Part shown: positions 9,424 to 34,854 of the stretch, one piece after another | Numbering within the stretch: the stretch's first letter is position 1 | Layout: every line of letters begins with the position of its first letter | Sequence record: PP712906.1 | Reading direction: 5' to 3' (one strand) | Length of the DNA: 64,000 nucleotides | The notes under the pieces: model-generated | What the model was told of the DNA's origin: nothing | Databases searched by the model: none | What the model saw: the letters and a program-made list of their open reading frames with translations, nothing else | Made by a program: the position numbers and the translations under genes

Positions 9424-9665
9424 TGAACATAATCGTCGAAAACGGCAACATTTTGCCGACTGATCAAGCGACGTTATTTGCTGACGAAGAAGTATTGAGA
9501 GTGCCTGGCACTTTCAATCTTACTGACTTGGTTTGTCATCTTGGTCTTTACAAATCAAAATCACAAGCCAGACAAGCGAATCGTGTCGGTGAAATCCCGA
9601 CTGGTTACACTGAATTCAAAGGCAATAAGAAAACGCCTTTGTACGTCTGGAATCCAACAGAGTAA
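9423..9665 (+). CDS. small protein with S4-like RNA-binding motif
   Basis: 'LTDLVCHLGLYKSKSQARQA' resembles the S4 domain core. Confidence 0.45.
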   Translation: MNIIVENGNILPTDQATLFADEEVLRVPGTFNLTDLVCHLGLYKSKSQARQANRVGEIPTGYTEFKGNKKTPLYVWNPTE

Positions 9666-23723: not shown

Positions 23724-24254
23724 CTATTTGCGCCCCTTACGATTTGCCTTATTTGCTTTTCTTTTTGCTCTACGCAATTCTTTGCGTTTTGCGATTTTGT
23801 CTGCACGTCTAACTGCATCATAATCCGCAGCACACGACGCAGCAAACGCATCAGGCTTGAAAACGGGTTCTTGACCCACGTATCCCAAGATAGTGCCCTT
23901 AGCTTCGTTATACGCAACGTGTGAACGATGGGATGGGTCTGGGTTGATGTCAACGTGAACTTCAAACCCACGAGTACCACACATTGGCTTAACACGCAGA
24001 GCAGTTTCACCTGCTTTATAGACTTCATTCATCAAACGACTACGAATACCATCTTTACACGACATGTACGCTGGTTCAGTTTCGATAGATTTGAATACTT
24101 GAGCGCCTTTGCTACCCTCAAGGTGAATGATGATTACAGTAGCGTAACTAATCATATCACTCTTACGCTTGCTATCACACCCAACATAAATCGTACTGTT
24201 CGGATGACTGTTATTGATAGCTGTTTCAATTGCTTCCCAATCGAACATTTTCAC
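23724..24254 (-). CDS. RNase H-like YkuK family protein
   Basis: IYVGCDS, RL..EV, EVHVDIN motifs. Confidence 0.8.
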   Translation of the reverse strand: MKMFDWEAIETAINNSHPNSTIYVGCDSKRKSDMISYATVIIIHLEGSKGAQVFKSIETEPAYMSCKDGIRSRLMNEVYKAGETALRVKPMCGTRGFEVHVDINPDPSHRSHVAYNEAKGTILGYVGQEPVFKPDAFAASCAADYDAVRRADKIAKRKELRRAKRKANKANRKGRK

Positions 24255-24298: not shown

Positions 24299-25735
24299 TT
24301 AAAAGCTGTAGCGTTCAACGCCTACAGTTTTCAGCATGATCTTGACTGGCTCAAGCTCACCACCCAACAGTGAAGTCAGGATAGATGGGCTACAACCCGA
24401 TACCAGTGCAGTACCCGCTTCGCCAGCTTTAACCGGAACGTTGCCAAGACGACCACGAATGTTCCAGAAGACTAGTTGTGGCATTTCATAGCCAGCACGT
24501 GCGTACATAGCTTTGATTGCGTCGAAGTTTGCACGTTCGCCACGACCGTACCAGCCACCACCAGTATTTGCTTGGTCGAATTCCATGTCGCTCATGATAA
24601 GCAACTTAGTCGGCATTTCTTCTTGTGAAAGATTTGCACGTTTCGCACGTTCTAACAGAACGTTGAAGCACTTACCGATGTTTGTGCTCATGTCTTCGCC
24701 TGATCGGTTCATGTTGTCAAGACGCTCTTTTAGTGAGCTACCGCGTAACTGGTGGAAGTGCGGATCGCTTGAGAAGGAAATGAACTGATCTTTGAAGATG
24801 CCTTCATTGCGTTCAGCAACATAGATGCCAAGAGACATTGCAACTTGCTTACAAGTCACACCTGAACGATCTGCACCTGCGTTGATTGGCGTGCTCATAG
24901 AGCCAGACACGTCAACAACTGGGATGATGCGCTCATCAGAGCCTTCCATGTAGTTCGGCAGGGCTTTCCATTGCTCGTTCGCTACAGACGCATTACCATG
25001 ACTAACGCTCTTAACGACATCATATGGGAACAAGGCACCAGCGTTGATCTTCGCTTCACCTTTTTGAAGCGACTCGATGTAGCTTGTGTAACGAGCAGAA
25101 GCATTACGACCGAATGCTTGTTGATAACGAGCCGACGCTACAGATGGCAACTTACCGAAGTCGATTGTATCCCATTCTTGCGCACACATCTTCTGTTCAA
25201 CAGTGTCAGACAAAAGTGCTAGAATCTTACGCCACTGCTTCGCAGTTACGCCAAGAGACTTGATTGTGCGCTTGAACACATGACCGTTTTTGCTGTTCTC
25301 GCGTGGGAACCACTTCGCAGCGAGACTGTTCTTGTCGTTTACAATCGCATTTGTCCACAGCGTGATCGCGTCTTTTTCAAGACGTGTACCGAAAGCAGAA
25401 ATCAAGTCGTCGAAACGACCTAGTTCTGGAATTTTCGACATTACAGCACGAGCTACGTCAGGCTGCTCATTACAAAGCTTAGTGAATAGAGTACGGAAAG
25501 TACCACGTTCACCCGCACCACCGCGAACATCACGAGACCACAAAAGAATACGTGTCGCTAGTTCTGGGTTTTCTGCAAACGCACGACCGAACAGTGTTTT
25601 AGACTGATCGTTACCACGCATAGCAGCAATACCGAAGAACAAGTTTAGACACTCGTTACCTGAAGTGCTGTGAGTAACTGCACCGTTTGCTGTACGTGAA
25701 TCGTTAGTGGTCATTGCGTTCATAAATGCTGACAT
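24299..25735 (-). CDS. DUF2828 family TROVE-like/vWA protein
   Basis: T.NGA..HSTSG..CL.LF N-terminus, helical region with RD.RGGAGER, MIDAS VVDVSGSM, ISFSS, MSDMEFD. Confidence 0.85.
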   Translation of the reverse strand: MSAFMNAMTTNDSRTANGAVTHSTSGNECLNLFFGIAAMRGNDQSKTLFGRAFAENPELATRILLWSRDVRGGAGERGTFRTLFTKLCNEQPDVARAVMSKIPELGRFDDLISAFGTRLEKDAITLWTNAIVNDKNSLAAKWFPRENSKNGHVFKRTIKSLGVTAKQWRKILALLSDTVEQKMCAQEWDTIDFGKLPSVASARYQQAFGRNASARYTSYIESLQKGEAKINAGALFPYDVVKSVSHGNASVANEQWKALPNYMEGSDERIIPVVDVSGSMSTPINAGADRSGVTCKQVAMSLGIYVAERNEGIFKDQFISFSSDPHFHQLRGSSLKERLDNMNRSGEDMSTNIGKCFNVLLERAKRANLSQEEMPTKLLIMSDMEFDQANTGGGWYGRGERANFDAIKAMYARAGYEMPQLVFWNIRGRLGNVPVKAGEAGTALVSGCSPSILTSLLGGELEPVKIMLKTVGVERYSF

Positions 25736-25770
25736 TGTTTATTCCTCATATTAAATTGCTGTAAAATGTC
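25729..25770 (-). promoter_or_regulatory. 5'-leader CAGCAA-motif hairpin occluding RBS and AUG (copy A)
   Basis: GACAUUUUA-CAGCAA-UUUAAUAUGAGGAAUAAAC-AAUGUC; the 3' strand contains the start codon. Confidence 0.75.
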
Positions 25771-25784
25771 GTTTTGATGTGATG

Positions 25785-26474: not shown

Positions 26475-26841
26475 CAATATATTCCTTAATCGGCTTAGAA
26501 AAGTGACGAATACAAGAACTGTCAAGTCGTTTACGACCATCACCATCTATATCAGGTAGTGTGTATTCGTCATTAAACGGCTGACCGCTTTCTTTCGCAA
26601 TCTCATAGGCATCGGCTCGATTGAAGTATTCACCACAATAGTTGATAAACCCTTGACCGCGATCCCCGAGTTCGTTTCGATGTTCATATGTACAACCTAG
26701 TTCTTTCAATAACTTAAAGACTGATTGCATGTTTCGACCGAAATGGCAGCTATCAGCAACAACAATGTCGCGCACTTCACCGTTCGGTAGTGTTACTCGA
26801 ATTGCATTAGCAGCAGACGATATTACATTGACGTGCGACAT
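26467..26841 (-). CDS. conserved phage hypothetical protein
   Basis: QGF...G.YFNR.DAY.IA..SGQ pattern. Confidence 0.7.
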   Translation of the reverse strand: MSHVNVISSAANAIRVTLPNGEVRDIVVADSCHFGRNMQSVFKLLKELGCTYEHRNELGDRGQGFINYCGEYFNRADAYEIAKESGQPFNDEYTLPDIDGDGRKRLDSSCIRHFSKPIKEYIDG

Positions 26842-27182
26842 GTATCGTACCTCATAAAAATTGAACCAACGCGCTTATACTGACCAGAGTGAGAAAGCAA
26901 CAGAGCCATTTTACTATGGCCAACGGGATTGCTTGTCACTAGAACAACAGTGCGCGGAAAATTACGATGATCAATCGCATGAGAGAGAATATCATACCCC
27001 TCTCTACCAACATCATCACCTAGGTCATTGTCCATGAATAGCGTGATGTCAGTTAGATTTGTGTGCTTGACAAAATTCATACCGTCTTCGAATGTACGAA
27101 GAACTAGCTTTTCATCGTCGCGTACATAATCTGACGTGTATTTGTCAATACTGCGAAGATCATCAATCATAACGTAGTACAT
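26823..27182 (-). CDS. cyclic-phosphate-processing receiver-like domain protein
   Basis: IDDLR, MDNDLG...GYD, TSNPVG motifs. Confidence 0.7.
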   Translation of the reverse strand: MYYVMIDDLRSIDKYTSDYVRDDEKLVLRTFEDGMNFVKHTNLTDITLFMDNDLGDDVGREGYDILSHAIDHRNFPRTVVLVTSNPVGHSKMALLLSHSGQYKRVGSIFMRYDTCRTSM

Positions 27183-28888: not shown

Positions 28889-29136
28889 CAGACATTCGAG
28901 AATTGTTTTATCGTCTTTCCTTAAATCTCAATTGACTATCTCGATGTTTCTCATCAAGAGAATACCCATGATTCGGCATGAGACCTATTTCGTTTAACAG
29001 TACGAGCACCGTCTTAATGGTCATTTCCTACCACGAGAATGCGACAGGCTCACGTCATCACTGAGAAAGCAGCTAGTGCGCCTCATTACTATTAAAGTTT
29101 GCTTCTTTGATTAGTAATAGTTGCTGTACAATGTCT
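28889..29136 (-). ncRNA. CAGCAA-motif RNA, large form (copy B)
   Basis: 5' AGACAUU-GUA-CAGCAA pairs with 3' AAUGUCU-G; starts 11 nt after tRNA-Ser CCA; paralogous to copy D. Confidence 0.7.
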
Positions 29137-29147
29137 TATTGCGAATT

Positions 29148-29236
29148 TGGCGGAGATACTGGGAATCGAACCCAGAGAACGCTATTAACGTCCGACACCT
29201 TAGCAGGGTGCTGTCATACCTTTAGACCATATCTCC
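29148..29236 (-). tRNA. tRNA-Ser(GCU)
   Basis: GGAGAUA/UAUCUCC, loop CUGCUAA, long variable arm, CCA. Confidence 0.95.
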
Positions 29237-29241
29237 GTAGA

Positions 29242-29421
29242 TCATTTCTTACCACGCTCTGCTTTGCTAATCTCGACAGCAGCGATTTGCGCGTTGGCTT
29301 CTTTCTCAGTGTCATGAGTACCAAGTACTCGACCTTTAGATGAAAGAGCAACCCATTTGTCGCCACGCTTCTCGACTTTCTCAACAAGCTTGTGATATTC
29401 ATCAAACGTTTTAAGTTTCAT
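29242..29421 (-). CDS. 59-aa putative internal head protein (not in ORF track)
   Basis: MKLKTFDEYHKLVEKVEKRGDKW...; TATAAATA at 29447-29454 and GAGGGA RBS. Confidence 0.75.
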   Translation of the reverse strand: MKLKTFDEYHKLVEKVEKRGDKWVALSSKGRVLGTHDTEKEANAQIAAVEISKAERGKK

Positions 29422-29471
29422 TTGTCATCCCTCAGTTAGTTTATTGTATTTATAACTGAACGACTTTTAAA

Positions 29472-29531
29472 CAGTGGCATGCTGCTCTCATGCTCAGACA
29501 CATATTTGCTCTTATTGCTGGCGTGTGCCAC
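29472..29531 (-). ncRNA. CAGCAA-motif RNA (copy C)
   Basis: GUGGCA-CACGC-CAGCAA ... UGCCAC-UG; spacing is 11 nt rather than 9. Confidence 0.55.
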
Positions 29532-29676
29532 GCGCTTCGCAGATCCCTTTTGATAATTTAACGACCAGCGGGACTCTTAGCAGGTCTACACATAGCCTTT
29601 CAGCTATATCTTCTTTTAAGACCATAGTGTCGTACGGTCTATTCACTCTCTTTCGATTCGCGTTGCTAAGTGAATT

Positions 29677-29753
29677 TGGTGCCCAACCCGAGATTCGAAC
29701 TCGGAACTTCTAGTGTTTGAAACTAGCGACTCTGCCAATTGGCCTAGTTGGGC
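29677..29753 (-). tRNA. tRNA-Leu(CAA), short variable arm
   Basis: GCCCAAC/GUUGGGC, loop UUCAAAC, CCA. Confidence 0.92.
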
Positions 29754-29870
29754 TTGAATAAGCTGCCGCAACTCTTTAATCCCTAACGCCTGTCAGCTTT
29801 CGCTCGGCTGAGACCGTTTTTTCAACGGCGGTAGTCTAGCTTCGTGTAGAACGCGGCTTATGCTAGAGTT

Positions 29871-29947
29871 TGGTACGCACGGGCGGATTCGAACCGCCAT
29901 CCCTGAGATTTTAAGCCTCATGCCTCTGCCAATTGGACCACGTGCGC
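29871..29947 (-). tRNA. tRNA-Leu(UAA), short variable arm
   Basis: GCGCACG/CGUGCGU, loop CUUAAAA, CCA. Confidence 0.92.
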
Positions 29948-29949
29948 AG

Positions 29950-30023
29950 TGGAGCCCGAACAGAGAATCGAACTCTGACCGCGGGATTTGCAATCCCTCA
30001 TACTTCCATTATACGATTCGGGC
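29950..30023 (-). tRNA. tRNA-Cys(GCA)
   Basis: GCCCGAA/UUCGGGC, loop UUGCAAA, U73, CCA. Confidence 0.94.
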
Positions 30024-30031
30024 AATTTGTT

Positions 30032-30125
30032 AGTGCATTGCATGGACTACTGGCGATCTTAATGGGTATCTCAAGCATTCAGAATTCCCATGCGCTACTA
30101 CAATGCTTTTTTCGCTAAATGCACT
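30032..30125 (-). ncRNA. structured spacer, possible divergent motif copy
   Basis: AGUGCAUU/AAUGCACU terminal stem followed by UAGCGAA instead of CAGCAA. Confidence 0.4.
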
Positions 30126-30126
30126 T

Positions 30127-30203
30127 TGGGGTGACAGACGGGGATCGAACCCGCATCTTCCGGAATCACAACCCGGGGGTATTTCCACTTCACCCACTGC
30201 CAC
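30127..30203 (-). tRNA. tRNA-His(GUG)
   Basis: GUGGCAG/CUGUCAC, loop UUGUGAU, C73, CCA; encoded -1 base is U. Confidence 0.94.
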
Positions 30204-30257
30204 ACCAAAGTACACTTTGGGATGTTTACGACATCAAACGAATGCGCTCCCTGTGCA

Positions 30258-30497
30258 TTAATCAGATTTCTTTAAGTAGATACTATCAGGCGATAGCTCT
30301 CTTGTAAACATATTTTTGAAATAAATTTCGATGTCATCAGAAGTTGTTGAAGACTCAATTTCAAGAGCACGTTCTAAAATCTTACCGCGTTTATAACCAG
30401 CGCGCCAACAGTCAAACATAAGCCTGTCCATGCGTTTCAGTTTTTCAATTTGGTTTTGATTTACGTATTCGTGAGTTTCAAGTAATACAGGCGTCAT
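30258..30497 (-). CDS. hypothetical protein
   Basis: ORF between tRNAs. Confidence 0.6.
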   Translation of the reverse strand: MTPVLLETHEYVNQNQIEKLKRMDRLMFDCWRAGYKRGKILERALEIESSTTSDDIEIYFKNMFTRELSPDSIYLKKSD

Positions 30498-30520
30498 AAT
30501 TTATTTCTCATCATAAAGAA

Positions 30521-30594
30521 TGGTAGTCCCTAGTGGAATCGAGCCACTTCTTTCTCTGTGTAAAAGAGACGTACTGCCATTATACTAAGGGACC
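30521..30594 (-). tRNA. tRNA-Val(UAC)
   Basis: GGUCCCU/AGGGACU, loop UUUACAC, T-loop begins with C, CCA. Confidence 0.92.
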
Positions 30595-30599
30595 AAAAT

Positions 30600-30673
30600 T
30601 GGAGCGGGTACACGGACTCGAACCGAGACGAACGACTTGGAAGGACGTCATGCTACCATTACATCATACCCGC
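30600..30673 (-). tRNA. tRNA-Gly(UCC)
   Basis: GCGGGUA/UACCCGC, loop CUUCCAA, U73, CCA. Confidence 0.94.
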
Positions 30674-30860
30674 ATTGTTAATCTGAAGCGTCGAACAAAT
30701 CACGTATTGCACGCAGATTCGTAAGCTCTACAGTAAGTGTTCTTATAAAGAACGGGTTGGTCTCTTTCGCGAGACGATTTTCAACACAGCGAATCTTATC
30801 GCGTATGTTGCCCTTGCTTAGTGTAAAGTAGTCATGCTTCTTATCCTCTTTGCTTGAATT

Positions 30861-30936
30861 TGGTGGAGACACCGATACTCGAAATCGGATCTAATGGCTT
30901 ATGAGACCATTGCTCTACCACTTGAGCTACATCTCC
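30861..30936 (-). tRNA. tRNA(CAU), probably elongator Met
   Basis: GGAGAUG/UGUCUCC, loop CUCAUAA, CCA. Confidence 0.88.
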
Positions 30937-30957
30937 AAAAGTAGTAATTAACTCATT

Positions 30958-31160
30958 TAATCGCACACGGGCTGACACCATATATTCATGGTCTGAGCGA
31001 GGAACCACATAGTGGGTACTATTACCTCATCTTAGTTTTGATTGTTTTACATGACGATAACTAGAAACGTTCATAATAATGCCACGCGATACTTCCTGTA
31101 TCACGGCTAACTGAGTTAGCATATCGTGCCTTTCGGCTGTAGTGTCGTTTCCGACGAATT
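30958..31160 (-). ncRNA. hairpin-rich non-coding spacer
   Basis: At least five hairpins, including GUCG-GAAA-CGAC, GCC-GAAA-GGC and CGUGAUAC/GUAUCGCG; no convincing ORF. Confidence 0.5.
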
Positions 31161-31165
31161 AAGTA

Positions 31166-31380
31166 CAGACAATACCGAAGTGTTTTTTCGTCTTTGACAT
31201 GAATCGGAGTTGACTATCTTGTTGCTTCTCAACAAGCAAATATCGTCTGCTTCAGCGACGCGCCTATCTGACTATTTCTAGGCAGAGAGAATCTTTCCTT
31301 TCAAGCTGCGCCGAAGCCACTGCCCAGGTGAAGATCATTACCATTTTTAAGTAATTTTAATTTGTTGCTGTATATTGTCT
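31166..31380 (-). ncRNA. CAGCAA-motif RNA, large form (copy D)
   Basis: AGACAAU-AUA-CAGCAA ... AUUGUCU-G; shares internal blocks with copy B. Confidence 0.7.
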
Positions 31381-31441
31381 CTCAAACCATGCTCGTGATA
31401 TGCCGAAGCAAGTATCATTCTTCGCATGATAGAGCTTAATT

Positions 31442-31517
31442 TGGCACGCCGTATGAGATTCGAACTCATAACCCCATCCTTAGAAGGGACGTGCTCTTCC
31501 AATTGAGCTAACAGCGC
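31442..31517 (-). tRNA. tRNA-Arg(UCU)
   Basis: GCGCUGU/ACGGCGU, loop CUUCUAA, CCA. Confidence 0.93.
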
Positions 31518-31594
31518 ATTGAAAAGAATTCGATCCATGAGCTATTGCGTAGAAGATGGTAGTAAAGAGACTCTACACTCATGTGATCGAAATT

Positions 31595-31669
31595 TGGTGG
31601 ACACGCAGGGAGTCGAACCCTATCTTCCTCATTGCAAGTGAGGCGCTTTCCCAATTAAGCTAACGGCCC
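31595..31669 (-). tRNA. tRNA-Ala(UGC), imperfect acceptor stem
   Basis: Loop CUUGCAA, G3:U70, CCA; lower acceptor needs a bulge to pair. Confidence 0.85.
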
Positions 31670-31676
31670 ATAATTA

Positions 31677-31886
31677 TTACAACTGTGTGATTGAAATATG
31701 ATCCCAGCCGTATAGACCTTCAAGCTCTTCAATCGGCTCACCAACAATATCAGAAATATATTCAGCAACTTTTGCTTCAATTTCTTCATCAGATAGTTTT
31801 TCATCAACAGAAAAAGCATCTTCGTTATTGTTGCCACCGAAATAGCCACCAATGTCATATTCACACCATATTGAAATATAATTCAT
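31677..31886 (-). CDS. acidic hypothetical protein (69 aa)
   Basis: Start MNYISIW with GAGAA RBS. Confidence 0.65.
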   Translation of the reverse strand: MNYISIWCEYDIGGYFGGNNNEDAFSVDEKLSDEEIEAKVAEYISDIVGEPIEELEGLYGWDHISITQL

Positions 31887-31911
31887 GTTATTCTCACAGT
31901 TGTTTAGAAAG

Positions 31912-31985
31912 TGGTGCCCCTGCTCAGAATCGAACTGAGATCGGATGCTTACAAGGCATCTGCTTGACCTTCCAGCTACAGAGGC
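31912..31985 (-). tRNA. tRNA-Thr(UGU)
   Basis: GCCUCUG/CAGGGGC, loop CUUGUAA, CCA. Confidence 0.93.
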
Positions 31986-31989
31986 GGTA

Positions 31990-32106
31990 CTGAGTGTTAT
32001 TACTTGCGTCGTCCAGACCAGTGATACCAACACTGAAAGGGAATCGAACCCTAAACATTTCTTTTCATCAGAAGAATATTAGTAAATTGTTTGCTGAAAA
32101 CACTCT
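31990..32106 (-). ncRNA. CAGCAA-motif RNA with permuted tRNA-like domain (copy E, YrlA-like)
   Basis: GAGUGUU-UU-CAGCAA ... AGGG-UUCGAUU-CCCU, UCAGUG/CACUGG closed hairpin, UGGA, AACACUC-AG. Confidence 0.75.
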
Positions 32107-32114
32107 ATGGTATT

Positions 32115-32188
32115 TGGCTGGGGATAACAGATTCGAACTGATACCAACGCATTCAAAGTACGTTATGCTGCCTTTACACCAATCCCCA
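32115..32188 (-). tRNA. tRNA-Gln(UUG)
   Basis: UGGGGAU/AUCCCCA, loop CUUUGAA, CCA. Confidence 0.94.
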
Positions 32189-32207
32189 ATTGTTCTTAAA
32201 TTATCTT

Positions 32208-32283
32208 TGGCGGAACCGACGGGTTTCGAACCCGCTACCTTCTCCGTGACAGGGAGACATGCAACCTTTTACACCTCGGCTCC
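32208..32283 (-). tRNA. tRNA-Asp(GUC)
   Basis: GGAGCCG/CGGUUCC, loop CUGUCAC, G73, CCA. Confidence 0.95.
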
Positions 32284-32354
32284 CCAAAGACAACTTAAAA
32301 GTAGTTGCTTTGTTTTTTTCAAGTCCACACTTAACGGTAGTGACTCTCCGAATT

Positions 32355-32430
32355 TGGCGCTTCATGTTGGACTCGAACCAACGACTCTCTGATTAACAGT
32401 CAGACACTCTACCAACTGAGTTAATGAAGC
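32355..32430 (-). tRNA. tRNA-Asn(GUU) copy 1
   Basis: GCUUCAU/AUGAAGC, loop CUGUUAA, CCA. Confidence 0.95.
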
Positions 32431-32431
32431 G

Positions 32432-32506
32432 TGGCGGGCGTGGAGAATTTCGAAATCTCGACTTGCAAGTTAACAGCTTGCTACTCTGCCTCTGAGTTAC
32501 ACACCC
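32432..32506 (-). tRNA. tRNA-Asn(GUU) copy 2
   Basis: GGGUGUG/CACGCCC, loop CUGUUAA, U:U at the base of the T loop, CCA. Confidence 0.9.
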
Positions 32507-32517
32507 TTGAATTTAAA

Positions 32518-32576
32518 CAGTAATCCTTTTTGCTTTTTCCAAATAAAAGTTTTGTATTGTTTGCTGTAAGATTACT
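32518..32576 (-). ncRNA. CAGCAA-motif RNA, minimal form (copy F)
   Basis: AGUAAUCU-UA-CAGCAA ... GGAUUACU-G; starts 5 nt after tRNA-Trp CCA. Confidence 0.72.
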
Positions 32577-32581
32577 TAAAC

Positions 32582-32655
32582 TGGCAGGGGCATAGAGATT
32601 CGAACTCTAACGAACGGGTTTGGAATCCGTCATGCTGCCTTTACATCATGCCCCT
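32582..32655 (-). tRNA. tRNA-Trp(CCA)
   Basis: AGGGGCA/UGCCCCU, loop UUCCAAA, G73, CCA. Confidence 0.92.
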
Positions 32656-32661
32656 AAAATT

Positions 32662-32735
32662 TGGTAGTCCCTAAGAGAATCGAACTCTTACCAAGCGATT
32701 ATCGGTCGCACGCTCTACCGTTGAGCTAAGGGACT
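32662..32735 (-). tRNA. tRNA-Ile(GAU)
   Basis: AGUCCCU/AGGGACU, loop CCGAUAA, CCA. Confidence 0.92.
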
Positions 32736-32798
32736 AAAGTGTGCGCATTTCAGCGCACTGTTAATCGGTTAAGTGACTAAACTTCCCGGTTAACTAAT

Positions 32799-32897
32799 TG
32801 GCGGAAGACTAGGGATTCGAACCCTAACATCACCTCCCGGTGACCGACGGTTTTCAAGACCGTTGCCGCTACCCAGAATCTTTCGGCTAAGCCTTCC
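32799..32897 (-). tRNA. tRNA-Ser(UGA), enlarged D loop
   Basis: GGAAGGC/GUCUUCC, loop CUUGAAA, long variable arm, 15-nt D loop, CCA. Confidence 0.9.
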
Positions 32898-32903
32898 TTT
32901 GTT

Positions 32904-32978
32904 TGGAAGCGAGTGCCAGAATCGAACTGACCTAGACTAGCTTATGAGACTAGTGAGTTCCCAGTACTCTTACTCGCA
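32904..32978 (-). tRNA. tRNA(CAU), initiator-like
   Basis: U1:U72 mismatch, loop CUCAUAA, CCA; lacks the three G-C pairs in the anticodon stem. Confidence 0.8.
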
Positions 32979-32979
32979 A

Positions 32980-33165
32980 TTATTTCGTATATTGAATCAG
33001 ACATGTATCTGATTGATAGATGAAAGTCCCTTCTGCCTTCTCGTCAACCTTAACGATGCAGCCGTTTGTACTCTTTTCAGCACGAGTTGATAGATCCGTT
33101 ACTGAAATGCCTGAACTACAAGCTGACAAACTTACTGCTAATACAAGTGCAAATAATGCTTTCAT
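32980..33165 (-). CDS. small lipoprotein
   Basis: Lipobox LSA-C after hydrophobic leader; GAAGG RBS. Confidence 0.75.
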   Translation of the reverse strand: MKALFALVLAVSLSACSSGISVTDLSTRAEKSTNGCIVKVDEKAEGTFIYQSDTCLIQYTK

Positions 33166-33186
33166 ATTACCTTCTCTTAAAAATTA

Positions 33187-33268
33187 CAGCTTGCGTTCTT
33201 TGGTCTATCAAGCGAATTCTGAATCAGACTTCGCACTACAGAGTAAGTTAAATTGCAGTATGCAAGCT
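33187..33268 (-). ncRNA. motif RNA (copy G, CUGCAA variant)
   Basis: AGCUUGC-AUA-CUGCAA ... GCAAGCU-G; starts 5 nt after tRNA-Tyr CCA. Confidence 0.68.
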
Positions 33269-33273
33269 AAAAT

Positions 33274-33360
33274 TGGTGGTTCGCCTAGGACTCGAACCTA
33301 GAAGCCCGTTAAGGGCGGGGGATTTACAATCCCTTGGCTTACCAATTAGCCTAACGAACC
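33274..33360 (-). tRNA. tRNA-Tyr(GUA)
   Basis: GGUUCGU/GCGAACC, loop UUGUAAA, long variable arm, CCA. Confidence 0.94.
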
Positions 33361-33717
33361 GATGTCTAATATACCAGCGTGTACTTCTCTATGACAATTT
33401 GCACAAAGCATCACACACTTGTCTAATTCGATTTTAGCGTTTTTAAAGCTAGACATTCGACCTTTATTTATCTCAAAGTCTTTACTATCAGGATCTTTGT
33501 GATGAAATTCCAGTGCGCTTATGCATCTATCGTAACCACAAGACTGACATTTTCCGCCCATGTACTCGACACAATCTGCTTTAAATTTTGCTCTATGTTC
33601 ATACACCTTAGCGTTACAGCAAGTTTTACAACTGCCTTCAATTCCGCTTTTAGTGTCGCTTCTTTTGTAATACTCAGTCAATGGCTTCATCGACTTGCAA
33701 GTAAAACATTCTTTCAT
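33346..33717 (-). mobile_element. free-standing HNH endonuclease
   Basis: Zn-binding CxxC pairs, LEFHH.D, KC..LCANCHREVH; 3' end overlaps tRNA-Tyr. Confidence 0.85.
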
Positions 33718-33784
33718 AACGTATCCTTTATTTATCAAGTGCTGTATCTCTACAGCGAAAGGTGCTACGCTATCAATTTAAAAA

Positions 33785-33859
33785 TGGTTCTCCCGACGAG
33801 ATTCGAACTCGCGCACTTCACCTTGAAAGGGTGATGACCTACCGTTAGTCCACGGGAGA
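33785..33859 (-). tRNA. tRNA-Glu(UUC)
   Basis: UCUCCCG/CGGGAGA, loop CUUUCAA, CCA. Confidence 0.93.
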
Positions 33860-34015
33860 ATTAAAAAGTATTTGTTAGCAAACTAGCAAGTTATCTGAGA
33901 TAATCATTTAACGAGCTCAGCTAGTAGGCTAACAGATACTCTTTCGAGTATTCATATCTAGTTTCTCACTTATTGCTTCAAAGTGACAGCTTATCTAGTT
34001 GCCTACGCTTAAATA

Positions 34016-34092
34016 TGGTACGCCGCCCTGGACTCGAACCAGACACCTGAGAGTTAAAAGCTCCCTGCTCTTCCATGATGAGCTACCGACGC
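34016..34092 (-). tRNA. tRNA-Lys(UUU) copy 1
   Basis: Loop CUUUUAA, G7:G66 mismatch, CCA. Confidence 0.9.
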
Positions 34093-34103
34093 ATTATAAA
34101 ATC

Positions 34104-34178
34104 TGGTGGGTCGCATGAGATTCGAACTCACACCGGTCTGGTTAAAAGCCAGATGTACTACCGTTATACGAACGACCC
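34104..34178 (-). tRNA. tRNA-Lys(UUU) copy 2
   Basis: GGGUCGU/GCGACCC, loop CUUUUAA, CCA. Confidence 0.94.
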
Positions 34179-34184
34179 AGAATG

Positions 34185-34259
34185 TGGTGCACCCCCTCGG
34201 AATCGAACCGAGCACTGCGGGACTTCAATCCGCCGCTTTTCCTGATAAGCTAAGGGTGC
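34185..34259 (-). tRNA. tRNA-Phe(GAA)
   Basis: GCACCCU/GGGGUGC, loop UUGAAGU, CCA. Confidence 0.9.
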
Positions 34260-34260
34260 A

Positions 34261-34337
34261 TGGTACGCATGAAGAGATTCGAACTCTTATCATTCGGCTT
34301 CTAAGACCGACGCCTCTGCCAATTGGGCTACATGCGC
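34261..34337 (-). tRNA. tRNA-Leu(UAG), short variable arm
   Basis: GCGCAUG/CAUGCGU, loop CUUAGAA, CCA. Confidence 0.92.
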
Positions 34338-34555
34338 ATTAAATTTTGTAAACTTCTTTTCTTCATTGTACATGATGTTTATATCGTTGTAAACATCTTT
34401 TTGAAATATTTTGAAGAACTTAACGTTTTCATTTCTATGTGTTAATATTAACACTCGCTCAAGACATCTTAAACACTAATTTGTGAAAAAGTTCGTTAAA
34501 TTCTATCATCACGACAGTACTTAACGAGATACGGTCCTAAGCGTATCATATCAAT

Positions 34556-34681
34556 TCAGAATGGTGAGACTTGAACTCACTTCGAGTAATAGCGTAAACT
34601 AACAGTTGTTGCCAGAGGCTATCAATTATTCTCTACCGAGTATGTTGCAACTCTGCATTTCCCCATTTCTAGGCATTCTGA
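34556..34681 (-). ncRNA. 126-nt tRNA-like element with expanded core
   Basis: UCAGAAUG/CAUUCUGA terminal stem and GUGAG-UUCAAGU-CUCAC T arm; no CCA and no clear anticodon arm. Confidence 0.5.
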
Positions 34682-34685
34682 AATA

Positions 34686-34761
34686 TGGCACCCCACAGAA
34701 GATTCGAACTTCTAACCTGCGCCTTCGTAGGACGCTGCTCTTCCAATTGAGCTAGTAGGGC
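34686..34761 (-). tRNA. tRNA-Arg(ACG)
   Basis: GCCCUAC/GUGGGGU, loop CUACGAA, CCA. Confidence 0.93.
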
Positions 34762-34768
34762 ATTAAAC

Positions 34769-34845
34769 TGGTCCGTGACAAGCGATTCGAACGCTTAACT
34801 TCTCCGCCCCAAACGGAGTACTCTACCAGATTGAGCTAGTCACGG
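34769..34845 (-). tRNA. tRNA-Pro(UGG) copy 1
   Basis: CCGUGAC/GUCACGG, loop UUUGGGG, CCA. Confidence 0.94.
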
Positions 34846-34854
34846 ATTTTAAAT

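What the first reader, a model, noticed from the sequence alone, without database searches (positions are those of the whole stretch)
31990..32106. Motif copy E has the circularly permuted tRNA domain typical of YrlA-type Y RNAs
Seen in sequence: the order is 5' stem strand and CAGCAA, a T arm (AGGG-UUCGAUU-CCCU), a hairpin-closed acceptor-like stem (UCAGUG-UUGGUAU-CACUGG), a D-loop-like UGGA segment, then the 3' stem strand. Established: bacterial YrlA RNAs have this permuted order, with the Ro-binding stem at the anticodon-stem position. The element fills almost the whole gap between tRNA-Gln and tRNA-Thr. The D arm pairing is weak.
Basis: partly seen in the sequence, partly recalled or inferred. 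Interest (0 to 1): 0.85.

Follow-up and report, generated by a model that had tools for sequence, protein, structure and literature searches.

The report
Phage Y-RNA-like tRNA mimic, new partner
A conserved 114-base RNA between two tRNA genes of a KVP40-like Vibrio phage has the rearranged-tRNA build of bacterial YrlA Y RNAs. Its likely protein-binding handle is a different motif that, across many phages, sits next to a divergent Ro60-like gene (DUF2828), pointing to an undescribed Ro/Y-RNA-type particle.

Summary

**Structure.** Twelve orthologues from at least three phage lineages keep the fold. 96% of pair cells are paired, against 44-62% in slid controls. Seven pairs show compensatory changes.

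**YrlA membership fails.** There is no Rfam hit even at E<=10, no GNCGAA motif, and no Pfam TROVE protein.

**A Ro60-like gene is nearby.** On the same strand, 6.3 kb downstream, lies a DUF2828/DUF7788 protein. Its model matches only Ro60 rings over full length (2nvo, 1yvr, 9l5y; E about 2e-6).

**The handle tracks that gene.**
- In 54 of 79 unrelated phage contigs, this gene is flanked on its own strand by small RNAs with copy E's handle: a 6-8 bp stem, a 1-3 nt spacer (2 in most), then [AU]C[AUC]GCAA.
- The same motif also forms a hairpin over the gene's own start codon.
- 21 handle-bearing RNAs in 19 contigs carry T arms; several also show an acceptor-like hairpin and a D arm. Rfam's YrlA model scores three of them at 35-42 bits.

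**Verdict.** Copy E is a reduced, YrlA-like tRNA mimic of a new Y-RNA-like family, probably bound by the phage's Ro60-like protein. Binding and function are inferred. High interest.

The parts
31992..32105 (-). Copy E, the whole RNA element from closing stem to closing stem (114 nt), inside the 129-nt Gln-Thr spacer 31986-32114
   Evidence: model R2 scores 12 orthologues at 102-158 bits
32099..32105 (-). P1a 5' strand, GAGUGUU
   Evidence: Pairs with 31992-31998. All 7 pairs are kept in 10 distinct sequences. They are invariant except one U-A/U-G change.
31992..31998 (-). P1a 3' strand, AACACUC
32086..32098 (-). Asymmetric bulge UUCAGCAAACAAU carrying the conserved motif UCAGCAA (32091-32097). 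The motif reads ACAGCAA in F86 and 6E35.1a. Proposed protein-binding handle.
   Evidence: CAGCAA is invariant in 12 orthologues. The same stem + 2 nt + [AU]C[AUC]GCAA handle sits next to the Ro60-like gene in 54 of 79 other phage loci.
32081..32085 (-). P1b 5' strand, UUACU. It pairs with AGUAA at 32000-32004.
   Evidence: Two pairs change on both sides in F86 and 6E35.1a (UUUA/UAAA).
32000..32004 (-). P1b 3' strand, AGUAA
32059..32076 (-). Variable-arm-like hairpin UUCUU-CUGAUGAA-AAGAA
   Evidence: The stem is invariant and the loop varies. There is no covariation, so the pairing is untested.
32037..32053 (-). T arm (U)AGGG-UUCGAUU-CCCU(U), with G53-C61 and a canonical T loop
   Evidence: Pair 50:64 occurs as A-U, G-U, G-C, C-G and U-A. 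Pair 52:62 occurs as G-C and A-U.
32019..32035 (-). Hairpin CAGUG-UUGGUAU-CACUG. I read it as the D-arm equivalent.
   Evidence: Three of 5 pairs change on both sides. The GG and the following UA are invariant and the other loop positions nearly so, giving YYGGUAK. See the comparison with relatives.
32008..32018 (-).
   Evidence: 3 bp, invariant except one U-A/U-G change. Weak and untested.
32115..32188 (-). tRNA-Gln(UUG), immediately upstream. Its 3' processing would free the 5' end of the element.
31912..31985 (-). tRNA-Thr(UGU), immediately downstream. RNase P cleavage at its 5' end would free the 3' end of the element.
24299..25735 (-). Ro60-like protein gene, 478 aa, orthologue of KVP40.0300. 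Pfam DUF2828 + DUF7788; PHROG 850 'RNA-binding protein'.
   Evidence: Pfam and PHROG hits. AF2 model with pLDDT 75.7. The Foldseek PDB top 5 are all Ro60, at E 2e-6 to 7e-6 and TM 0.47-0.59 over full length. In BFVD, TROVE and Ro-like phage proteins score E 1e-6 to 1e-4.
25730..25771 (-). Leader hairpin of the Ro60-like gene: GACAUU-UU-ACAGCAA-...GAGGAAU...-AAUGUC. It encloses the ribosome-binding site, and the start codon lies in its 3' strand.
   Evidence: The same hairpin occurs in VH7D and 6E35.1a, and in the leaders of 5 distant loci.
32519..32576 (-). Short 58-nt sister RNA (AGUAAUC-UU-ACAGCAA...GAUUACU) between tRNA-Trp and tRNA-Asn
   Evidence: Model R1 was built only from RNAs next to the Ro60-like gene of uncultured phages. 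It scores this RNA at 39.3 bits, E 5e-8. Rfam Dicty_Class_I_RNA gives 31.8 bits.
33188..33268 (-). Further handle-bearing element, AGCUUGC-AU-ACUGCAA...GCAAGCU (81 nt)
   Evidence: Weak by model R1 (E 1.1).
31285..31383 (-). Further handle-bearing element, GAGAGA-CAAUAU-ACAGCAA...UCUCUC
   Evidence: Weak by model R1 (E 2.1).

Best explanation
Copy E is a phage non-coding RNA of the Y-RNA type with two modules.

**Biogenesis (inferred).** It is transcribed within the polycistronic tRNA precursor on the minus strand. Normal tRNA processing cuts it out: 3' maturation of tRNA-Gln lies 9 nt upstream, and RNase P cleavage of tRNA-Thr lies 6 nt downstream.

**Module 1: the handle.** This is the base-paired 5'/3' end (P1a), a bulge carrying UCAGCAA, and a second short helix (P1b). 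I propose that the phage's own Ro60-like ring protein binds it. That protein is the DUF2828/DUF7788 product of 24299-25735, on the same strand. The proposal is an inference from genomic association.

**Module 2: the tRNA mimic.** This is a reduced, circularly permuted tRNA mimic: a variable-arm-like hairpin, a canonical T arm, and a hairpin with a D-loop-like GG loop. It probably forms a tRNA elbow (inferred). The fold itself is shown by covariation.

**Function (inferred by analogy).** As in Ro60-Y RNA-PNPase particles, the tRNA-like module would either recruit a tRNA-recognising host or phage enzyme to the ring, or stabilise the RNA. The RNA would thereby tether or gate the Ro60-like protein during infection.

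**Feedback (inferred).** The same handle forms a hairpin over the ribosome-binding site and start codon of the Ro60-like mRNA. This suggests the protein represses its own translation, and that the small RNAs compete for it.
For: **1. Fold.**
- 96.3% of pair cells are paired, against 44-62% in slid controls.
- Seven pairs show compensatory change, located in P1b, the T arm and the following hairpin.
- The T loop is canonical, UUCGAUU, with an invariant G53-C61.

**2. Ro60-like protein.**
- The Foldseek PDB top 5 hits are all Ro60 over full length: 2nvo, 1yvr, 9l5y and 2i91, at E 2e-6 to 7e-6.
- The next hits are vWA domains only, at E>=0.03.
- In BFVD, TROVE and 'Ro-like RNA binding protein' of phages score E 1e-6 to 1e-4.
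- Pfam vWA_Ro60 gives weak hits in 3 of 27 homologues.

**3. Handle and gene go together.**
- In 79 IMG/VR loci encoding homologues, 54 have a stem + [AU]C[AUC]GCAA element next to the gene on its strand. That is 67 elements, against 7 on the opposite strand.
- Over whole loci the counts are 176 against 79, with about 57 in shuffles.
- For the exact ACAGCAA motif, density is 0.61 per kb near the gene against 0.030 per kb elsewhere.
- Stems covary: UGGUUCC, AGGUUUC, AGGCUUC, AGGAUGC and others.
- A model built from those RNAs alone finds window 32519-32576 at E 5e-8.

**4. Leader hairpins.** Hairpins carrying the motif lie over the start codon in the window, VH7D, 6E35.1a and 5 distant loci.

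**5. tRNA-like relatives.**
- 21 distinct handle-bearing RNAs carry T arms, and several also have an acceptor hairpin and a D arm. They occur in 19 of 80 loci, all on the gene strand.
- Three of them lie directly upstream of the gene.
- Rfam YrlA scores three of them at 34.8-41.9 bits, E 1e-6 to 1e-5.

**6. Transcription context.** No promoter or terminator consensus separates copy E from its flanking tRNAs.

**7. Precedent.** D. radiodurans Yrn1 and Yrn2 are made in one precursor with tRNA-Asp. Phage Ro60 proteins with adjacent Y-like RNAs are known (PMC4201824; PMC12135203).
Against: - There is no binding, expression or modification data.
- The Ro60 similarity is structural only. The AF2 model has pLDDT 75.7 and the TM-scores are 0.47-0.59. 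Sequence searches give E about 1 to PDB TROVE chains.
- In this phage the gene is 6.3 kb from copy E rather than adjacent.
- Copy E's own handle matches model R1 only at 9.9 bits, E 4.6. In the window it starts with U rather than A.
- P1a, the V hairpin and the mini-hairpin never vary, so they are untested.
- Single-sequence folding energy is unremarkable.
- The 79 loci are phylogenetically related, so the counts are not independent events.
- The effector of the tRNA-like module is unknown.
Confidence: 0.6

Rival explanations
1. Copy E is a stable by-product or scaffold of the tRNA operon. It would be comparable to the T4 species 1 and 2 RNAs: tRNA-like pieces that help, or merely survive, RNase P/RNase E processing. 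It would have no dedicated protein partner, and the CAGCAA motif would be a processing signal.
For: It sits between two tRNAs with no promoter or terminator of its own. T4 also carries stable RNAs with a T arm in its tRNA cluster. Several handle-bearing elements in the window lie in inter-tRNA gaps.
Against: The handle is also found right beside the Ro60-like gene. In the window, VH7D, 6E35.1a and 5 distant loci, it lies in that gene's translation-start hairpin, where no tRNA processing is involved. T4 rnaC and rnaD are not hit by either model.
Confidence: 0.17
2. Copy E is a tRNA-elbow decoy that acts independently of the Ro60-like protein. It would titrate or redirect a tRNA-recognising factor, such as RNase P, TruB/TrmA, the CCA-adding enzyme, or a host tRNA-directed defence nuclease.
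For: The T arm is canonical and a conserved GG loop is present. The element lies within a cluster of 30 tRNA genes (28 called by each of ARAGORN and Rfam, 26 in common). YrlA is a substrate of TruB and DusA (PMC4201824).
Against: It has no anticodon arm and no free acceptor end, which are the usual targets of tRNA nucleases. This idea does not explain the conserved handle shared with RNAs that lack any tRNA-like part.
Confidence: 0.12
3. Copy E is a canonical YrlA (Rfam RF02553) that binds a true TROVE-domain Ro60 of the host or the phage.
For: It has the permuted V-T-(AS)-D order and a closing stem.
Against: There is no RF02553 hit at E<=10 and no GNCGAAN0-1G motif. Neither the 478-aa gene nor its 26 aligned homologues hit Pfam TROVE, and no other ORF of 100 aa or more within 4 kb of the element exceeds 186 aa, far short of Ro60's 460-530 aa.
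Confidence: 0.04
4. Copy E is a decaying tRNA pseudogene or duplication remnant without function.
For: It has a T arm and D-loop-like sequence in a tRNA cluster. KVP40 annotators already list several 'pseudo-tRNAs'.
Against: The Gln-element-Thr unit and the fold are kept, with compensatory changes, across lineages whose whole region is only 69-78% identical. Homologous architectures occur in unrelated phages.
Confidence: 0.03

Closest known systems
YrlA, the Y RNA-like A of Salmonella, M. smegmatis and mycobacteriophages (Rfam RF02553; Chen et al. 2014, PMC4201824)
   Same: - The 5'/3' ends pair into a stem that carries a conserved single-stranded motif on the 5' side.
- The effector module is a circularly permuted tRNA mimic in the order V, T, (AS), D.
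- It is encoded on the same strand as a ring-shaped Ro60-type protein.
- It can be made in one precursor with tRNAs.
- Fuller relatives of copy E score 35-42 bits with the YrlA model.
   Different: - The motif is [AU]C[AUC]GCAA rather than GNCGAAN0-1G.
- The candidate partner is DUF2828/DUF7788, not Pfam TROVE.
- Copy E itself gets no RF02553 hit.
- One of the AS/D hairpins is missing or reduced to 3 bp.
- The gene is 6.3 kb away, not within 4 kb.
Thermus phage phiLo Ro60 with Yrl1 and Yrl2 (PMC12135203; PDB 9L5Y, 9KOP)
   Same: - A phage-encoded Ro60-type ring with phage-encoded small RNAs of stem-bulge-stem design near the gene.
- 9l5y is among the best structural matches of the window protein.
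   Different: - The phiLo protein is a recognised TROVE protein.
- Its RNAs carry the CGAA motif and were not described as tRNA-like.
- Binding and PNPase recruitment were shown experimentally there and are only inferred here.
Dictyostelium Class I RNAs (Rfam RF01414; PMC7919456)
   Same: - They are about 60-nt RNAs with a 6-bp 5'/3' stem, followed directly by a conserved, unpaired 11-nt motif.
- By my recollection the motif is CCUUACAGCAA. The paper (PMC7919456) gives only 5 of its 11 positions, and these agree.
- Many phage short RNAs read ...UUCCUUACAGCAA.
- Window 32519-32576 scores 31.8 bits and L052 11844-11900 scores 30.8 bits with RF01414.
   Different: - Both scores are below the gathering score of 41.5.
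- Class I RNAs are reported as restricted to dictyostelids and bind the RRM protein Rnp1A/CIBP.
- No link to a DUF2828 protein is known, and I could not test one.
- Copy E itself is twice as long and carries a tRNA-like insert.
Phage T4 species 1 and species 2 stable RNAs (rnaC, rnaD)
   Same: They are small stable RNAs of unknown function embedded in a T4-type phage tRNA cluster. Species 1 ends in a T arm plus acceptor-like strand.
   Different: There is no sequence or model similarity: R1 and R2 give no hit at E<=5. The order is not permuted and there is no CAGCAA handle.

Membership tests
YrlA (Rfam RF02553) | Scores at or above the Rfam gathering threshold (69 bits) with the covariance model | tested here: not met
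   No hit on 31980-32120 even at E<=10 or in the 9-kb scan. Fuller relatives in other phages reach 34.8-41.9 bits.
YrlA (Rfam RF02553) | GNCGAAN0-1G motif near the 5' end, the presumed Rsr/Ro60 contact | tested here: not met
   The 5' side reads GAGUGUUUUCAGCAAACAAU. No GNCGAA occurs anywhere outside the T loop.
YrlA (Rfam RF02553) | Conserved T stem-loop resembling the tRNA T arm | tested here: met
   AGGG-UUCGAUU-CCCU with an invariant G53-C61. Two pairs covary.
YrlA (Rfam RF02553) | Separate acceptor-like (AS) stem-loop between T and D, plus a nearly invariant tRNA-like D arm | tested here: inconclusive
   One well-supported hairpin (5 bp, 3 covarying pairs, loop UUGGUAU) is followed by a 3-bp invariant mini-hairpin. 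Which is AS and which is D is unresolved. Relatives exist both with AS+D and with D only.
YrlA (Rfam RF02553) | V stem-loop upstream of the T arm | tested here: inconclusive
   UUCUU/AAGAA is present in all 12 orthologues and the loop varies, but the stem shows no covariation.
YrlA (Rfam RF02553) | Encoded within about 4 kb of a TROVE-domain Ro60 orthologue on the same strand | tested here: not met
   The nearest candidate, 24299-25735, is on the same strand but 6.3 kb away. It hits DUF2828/DUF7788, not TROVE. It is Ro60-like only by predicted structure.
YrlA (Rfam RF02553) | Bound by Ro60/Rsr, and carries pseudouridine-55 and dihydrouridine made by TruB and DusA | not testable with these tools
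   Needs RIP or EMSA, and CMC or alkaline primer extension.
Phage 'GCAA-handle' RNAs next to DUF2828 Ro60-like genes (family defined here) | 6-8 bp stem joining the 5' and 3' ends, a 1-3 nt spacer, then unpaired [AU]C[AUC]GCAA on the 5' side | tested here: met
   (A)GAGUGU(U)-UU-UCAGCAA ... (A)ACACUC. The motif is ACAGCAA in F86 and 6E35.1a.
Phage 'GCAA-handle' RNAs next to DUF2828 Ro60-like genes (family defined here) | Significant score with model R1, built from 27 short RNAs of uncultured phages | tested here: inconclusive
   Copy E's 5' part scores 9.9 bits, E 4.6. The 55-position model cannot span its 90-nt insert. The sister RNA 32519-32576 scores 39.3 bits, E 5e-8.
Phage 'GCAA-handle' RNAs next to DUF2828 Ro60-like genes (family defined here) | Genome encodes a DUF2828/DUF7788 protein on the same strand | tested here: met
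   Synteny is kept in KVP40 and 6E35.1a.
tRNA (Rfam RF00005) | Cloverleaf with free acceptor ends and an anticodon arm, detected by ARAGORN or Rfam | tested here: not met
   Neither tool calls it. It has no anticodon arm.
Dictyostelium Class I RNA (Rfam RF01414) | About 60 nt, a 6-bp terminal stem, the 11-nt motif, and a score >= 41.5 bits | tested here: not met
   No RF01414 hit on copy E. The neighbouring 58-nt RNA reaches 31.8 bits.
T4 species 1/2 RNAs | Sequence or structure similarity to T4 rnaC or rnaD | tested here: not met
   R1 and R2 give no hit in the T4 tRNA region at E<=5.

The most novel reading that the evidence does not exclude
DUF2828/DUF7788 proteins are a second, unrecognised branch of the Ro60 family. 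They are present in thousands of marine phages, in giant viruses and in eukaryotes. This branch has its own class of Y-RNA-like partners, defined by a terminal stem plus the (CCUU)ACAGCAA motif. Copy E is the YrlA-equivalent of that class: handle plus permuted tRNA mimic. The long-unexplained Dictyostelium Class I RNAs would be the eukaryotic members of the same RNA class, implying that they work through a DUF2828 ring protein.
Probability: 0.25. Interest if true: 0.95.

Novelty: new variant of a known kind. Interest (0 to 1): 0.85.

Why it matters
Ro60-Y RNA particles are an RNA quality-control system conserved from bacteria to humans. Only TROVE-domain Ro60 and CGAA-type Y RNAs are known.

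If the inference holds, four things follow:
- A very abundant phage protein family of unknown function gets a function and an RNA ligand. The family has more than 7000 clusters in the search, and PHROG 850 lists it only as 'RNA-binding protein'.
- Several unexplained gaps in the large tRNA clusters of KVP40-like and marine T4-like phages turn out to encode partner RNAs, with a simple search rule for finding them.
- tRNA mimicry in Y RNAs would prove to be a recurrent design, kept even when both the protein-binding motif and the protein family differ.
- There is a concrete, testable lead for the partner of Dictyostelium Class I RNAs, whose mechanism has been open since 2004.

It would also add a likely autoregulatory leader, a small and tractable model for how the ring protein recognises RNA.

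Tried and rejected
- **Rfam on copy E.** YrlA, tRNA and all other families were scanned three ways. Nothing meaningful was found. The only YrlA 'hits' in the window lie over pairs of adjacent real tRNAs.
- **Single-sequence thermodynamics.** Not informative, z = 0.08.
- **IMG/VR pattern scan.** The scan looked for the T loop plus GG loop at fixed spacing. It returned only KVP40 and VH7D plus four chance matches inside coding sequence. Copy E proper is therefore confined to KVP40-like, nt-1-like and oyster-Vibrio phages.
- **T4 rnaC/rnaD homology.** Rejected.
- **Sequence-only link of the protein to Ro60.** PDB phmmer and hmmsearch give only designed armadillo repeats, and TROVE at E = 1. Pfam TROVE is not hit. 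The link rests on predicted structure.
- **A conserved protein neighbour of the Ro60-like gene.** I tested the RNaseH_like PF04308 gene, the cREC gene and the small ORFs as possible effectors. None is conserved outside close relatives.
- **The CAGCAA/ACGCA long-range G-C pairs proposed by RNAalifold.** Dropped in favour of P1b, which covaries.
- **A third covariance model to decide AS versus D for copy E's hairpin.** Not built, because the MAFFT alignment of the full-architecture relatives mis-registers the AS helices and would bias the answer.
- **Literature.** No paper in the library links DUF2828 to RNA. Burroughs and Aravind 2016 and the 2020 Ro60 review could not be read.
Full report
**Where we are.** The window is a KVP40-like Vibrio phage (Straboviridae, Schizotequatrovirus). 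It is 100% identical over 1.6 kb to phage TCU-VP03-AIR1 and 89% identical to KVP40. The finding lies on the minus strand inside a cluster of 30 tRNA genes spanning 29148-36840 (28 called by each tool, 26 in common). More exactly, it lies in the 129-nt gap between tRNA-Gln (32115-32188) and tRNA-Thr (31912-31985).

**The observation.** Read 5' to 3' on the minus strand, the gap contains these features:
- GAGUGUU, then UU and CAGCAA
- AGGG-UUCGAUU-CCCU
- CAGUG-UUGGUAU-CACUG
- GUC-UGGAC-GAC
- AACACUC, which pairs with the first heptamer

The minimum free energy of the single sequence is no better than that of shuffles (z = 0.08), so the sequence alone proves nothing.

**Comparative test of the fold.** The Gln-element-Thr unit is present in 49 Vibrio phage records. 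I took 12 of them, 10 distinct. They include KVP40, nt-1 (genus Mylasvirus), VS1, and the oyster-Vibrio phages F86 and 6E35.1a, whose whole region is only 69-78% identical to the window.

RNAalifold recovers five elements: the closing stem, the extra hairpin, the T arm, the next hairpin and the 3-bp mini-hairpin. I added a second helix, P1b (UUACU/AGUAA). I then built a covariance model (R2), realigned the orthologues and counted pairs:
- 96.3% of cells pair, against 44-62% when 3' partners are slid by 1-3 columns.
- Seven pairs change on both sides: two in P1b, two in the T arm and three in the hairpin after it. The slid controls give 0-2.
- The closing stem, the V-like hairpin and the mini-hairpin never vary, so they are neither supported nor contradicted.

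The T loop is canonical (UUCGAUU, UUCGACU or UUCGAAU) with an invariant G53-C61. This is a conserved, structured RNA and not a decayed tRNA.

**Is it a YrlA?** By the family's own criteria (PMC4201824), no.
- Rfam RF02553 gives no match even at E<=10 in a 141-nt search.
- There is no GNCGAAN0-1G motif.
- No Pfam TROVE protein is nearby.

The topology, however, is exactly the YrlA one: a terminal stem with a conserved 5'-side motif, then V, T and further hairpins.

**The decisive lead: a Ro60-like gene.** KVP40's annotation lists a 478-aa 'RNA-binding protein' (KVP40.0300) on the same strand, just beyond the tRNA cluster. The window's orthologue is 24299-25735, which is 6.3 kb downstream of copy E.

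It hits Pfam DUF2828 and DUF7788 and PHROG 850. Sequence searches barely touch Ro60. An AlphaFold model from 27 homologues (pLDDT 75.7, pTM 0.71) gives a clearer answer:
- Against the PDB, the best five matches are all Ro60: D. radiodurans Rsr 2nvo, Xenopus Ro 1yvr and 2i91, and Thermus phage phiLo Ro60 9l5y. All are over full length, at E 2e-6 to 7e-6 and TM 0.47-0.59.
- Every later match covers only the vWA domain, at E>=0.03.
- Against viral models, DUF2828/DUF7788 proteins of phages and giant viruses come first. TROVE and 'Ro-like RNA binding' proteins of phages follow at E 1e-6 to 1e-4.

I conclude that the phage encodes a divergent Ro60-type ring: a helical-repeat domain plus a vWA domain with a DVSGSM MIDAS motif.

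**The handle travels with that gene.** The protein has more than 7000 homologue clusters, mostly on large marine phage contigs. I fetched 80 IMG/VR loci around homologues.
- In 27 loci, a stem + ACAGCAA element follows the stop codon within 700 nt; where it directly abuts the gene it begins 20-30 nt after the stop, and in other loci about 285-665 nt after. It is usually a short RNA of about 57 nt (for example UGGUUCC-UU-ACAGCAA...GGAACCA), followed by a longer one of 125-180 nt.
- In 6 loci, a short hairpin with the same motif lies over the gene's own start.
- Density is 0.61 per kb there against 0.030 per kb elsewhere.
- Other loci use close variants: UGCAGCAA, ACUGCAA, UCUGCAA and ACCGCAA.
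- With the motif [AU]C[AUC]GCAA, 54 of 79 loci have such an element beside the gene on its strand. That is 67 elements, against 7 on the opposite strand. Over whole loci the counts are 176 against 79, with about 57 in shuffled sequence.
- The stems covary freely while the motif is invariant.
- No protein-coding neighbour is conserved outside close relatives. Nothing in Rfam 15 covers these RNAs.

**Tying this back to the window.** I built a model (R1) from 27 of those uncultured-phage RNAs only. It finds window 32519-32576 (minus strand, between tRNA-Trp and tRNA-Asn) at 39.3 bits, E 5e-8.

Five of its next six hits are other handle-bearing sites on the same strand: 29081-29136, 33188-33268, 31332-31380, the leader of the Ro60-like gene at 25730-25771, and the 5' part of copy E. 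Each is individually insignificant.

The leader reads GACAUU-UU-ACAGCAA-UUUAAUAUGAGGAAUAAACA-AUGUC. The ribosome-binding site sits in the loop and the AUG in the 3' strand, downstream of a TTTACA/TATAAT promoter. VH7D and 6E35.1a have the same leader.

Copy E fits the handle rule: (A)GAGUGU(U), UU, UCAGCAA. The motif is ACAGCAA in F86 and 6E35.1a.

**tRNA-like relatives of copy E.**
- Model R2 picks up weaker matches in the marine loci: L086 at E 0.002, L066 at E 0.007 and L056 at E 0.09.
- A direct search for handle plus T arm finds 21 distinct RNAs in 19 of the 80 loci. All are on the strand of the Ro60-like gene. Three lie immediately upstream of it: L056, L080 and L086.
- Laid side by side, they share the handle, an A-rich linker and a T arm.
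- After the T arm, some have a closed 4-7 bp acceptor-like hairpin followed by a textbook D arm, for example UAGCUCAGUUGGUAGAGCA in L052 and L048. Others have the D arm alone (L080, L086).
- Rfam's YrlA model recognises the T-AS-D core of three of them: 38.0, 34.8 and 41.9 bits, at E 1e-6 to 1e-5. All are below the gathering score of 69.

Copy E is therefore a reduced member of a family whose fuller members are plainly YrlA-like in their effector module.

- Favouring my D-arm reading: the hairpin loop matches the D-loop core (YYGGUA), and in F86 it reads AGUUGGUAG. The acceptor-less relatives go from T arm to D arm to AGGUC, and copy E has CACUG-GUC.

I favour the D-arm reading but could not settle it.

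**Mechanism, with the status of each step.**
- *Shown:* the conserved fold; the canonical T arm; the shared handle; the genomic coupling of handle and Ro60-like gene; the leader hairpin.
- *Inferred:* release by tRNA processing, since no promoter or terminator consensus lies between the flanking tRNAs; binding of the handle by the DUF2828 ring; elbow formation; recruitment of a tRNA-recognising factor or protection from nucleases, as proposed for YrlA and Ro60-Y RNA-PNPase; translational autoregulation.

**Rivals.**
- A processing by-product like the T4 species 1 and 2 RNAs. There is no homology.
- A protein-independent tRNA decoy.
- A true YrlA.
- A pseudogene.

**Comparison and novelty.** Phage Ro60 with adjacent Y-like RNAs is known for mycobacteriophages, CcrColossus, Bacillus phage G and Thermus phiLo. 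All of these have TROVE proteins and the CGAA motif. Three things are new here: the protein family, the RNA motif, and their wide spread.

The motif and layout of the short RNAs coincide with Dictyostelium Class I RNAs, which are about 60 nt with a 6-bp stem and an adjacent 11-nt motif (PMC7919456). Rfam RF01414 scores two of the phage RNAs at about 31 bits. Whether that reflects a shared DUF2828 partner could not be tested here.

I rate this a new variant of a known kind, of high interest.

Noticed in passing
window 32519-32576 (-): A 58-nt RNA, AGUAAUC-UU-ACAGCAA...GAUUACU, between tRNA-Trp and tRNA-Asn. It is a clear member of the short RNA class found next to Ro60-like genes of uncultured phages (R1 39.3 bits, E 5e-8). 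It resembles Dictyostelium Class I RNA (RF01414, 31.8 bits). The KVP40 orthologue is L019 16666-16723. The 6E35.1a orthologue uses UCUGCAA.
   Followed up: yes
window 25730-25771 (-): The leader of the Ro60-like gene folds into a hairpin carrying ACAGCAA that encloses the ribosome-binding site and start codon, downstream of a TTTACA-16-TATAAT promoter. It is a likely autoregulatory site. It is conserved in VH7D and 6E35.1a, and analogous hairpins occur in L044, L051, L067, L070 and L086.
   Followed up: partly
window 33188-33268 (-), 31285-31383 (-), 29081-29136 (-): Three more handle-bearing elements in gaps of the tRNA cluster: AGCUUGC-AU-ACUGCAA...GCAAGCU; GAGAGA-CAAUAU-ACAGCAA...UCUCUC; and an ACAGCAA after the last tRNA-Ser whose closing stem I could not find. 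Each is weak by model R1 (E 0.85-2.1).
   Followed up: partly
L052 11835-12600 (IMGVR_UViG_3300042559_001610): An uncultured phage carries, in a row on one strand and about 6 kb past its Ro60-like gene: a Class-I-like 57-nt RNA, three handle-bearing YrlA-like permuted tRNA mimics with canonical D arms, and ordinary tRNAs interleaved. It is the clearest full version of the family.
   Followed up: partly
window 35558-35670 (-): A tRNA that Rfam scores at 49.8 bits over 113 nt but ARAGORN does not call. It carries an insertion of about 40 nt after the D arm/anticodon region. KVP40 annotates the orthologue as 'tRNA-Pseudo-3'. It may be an intron-containing or interrupted tRNA.
   Followed up: no
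window 34555-34682 (-): A tRNA-like RNA in normal, non-permuted order: a 9-bp acceptor-like stem UUCAGAAUG/CAUUCUGAA, an insert of about 80 nt, then the T arm GUGAG-UUCAAGU-CUCAC directly before the 3' strand. It is reminiscent of T4 species 1 RNA. It is not called by any tool.
   Followed up: no
window 36211-36450 (-): A structured region of about 240 nt (MFE -76 kcal/mol) whose ends pair (GCCGCU/AGCGGC). It ends in a T arm plus GCCA, with a second T-arm-like hairpin inside. Rfam gives only a faint beta-tmRNA hit (14.8 bits). It may be a tmRNA-like or large tRNA-like RNA.
   Followed up: no
window 33346-33738 (-): A small ORF (130 aa) with a weak HNH endonuclease match (E 0.0036, below the Pfam cutoff), sitting between tRNA-Tyr and tRNA-Glu. 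It is a likely homing endonuclease inside the tRNA cluster. The nt-1 and PVA8 records annotate HNH genes in the same region.
   Followed up: no
window 23724-24254 (-) and 26823-27182 (-): The genes flanking the Ro60-like gene region include an RNaseH_like protein (PF04308, E 6e-17) immediately downstream, and a cREC 'cyclic-phosphate processing receiver' domain protein (PF20274, E 1e-14) 1.1 kb upstream. Both have RNA-repair or RNA-processing associations. Neither is conserved next to the gene in distant phages.
   Followed up: partly
window 31598-31669 (-): Rfam calls a tRNA (44.9 bits) with anticodon UGC (Ala) that ARAGORN misses. KVP40 lists the orthologue as a pseudo-tRNA, while 6E35.1a annotates tRNA-Ala at the syntenic place.
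   Followed up: no
L047, L057 about 9440-9540 (+): In these loci the long RNA after the Ro60-like gene uses the variant ACUGCAA and contains a T-arm-like hairpin, GAUAGG-UUCAAAC-CCUGUC. This suggests tRNA-like modules arose or persist in several branches of the family.
   Followed up: no
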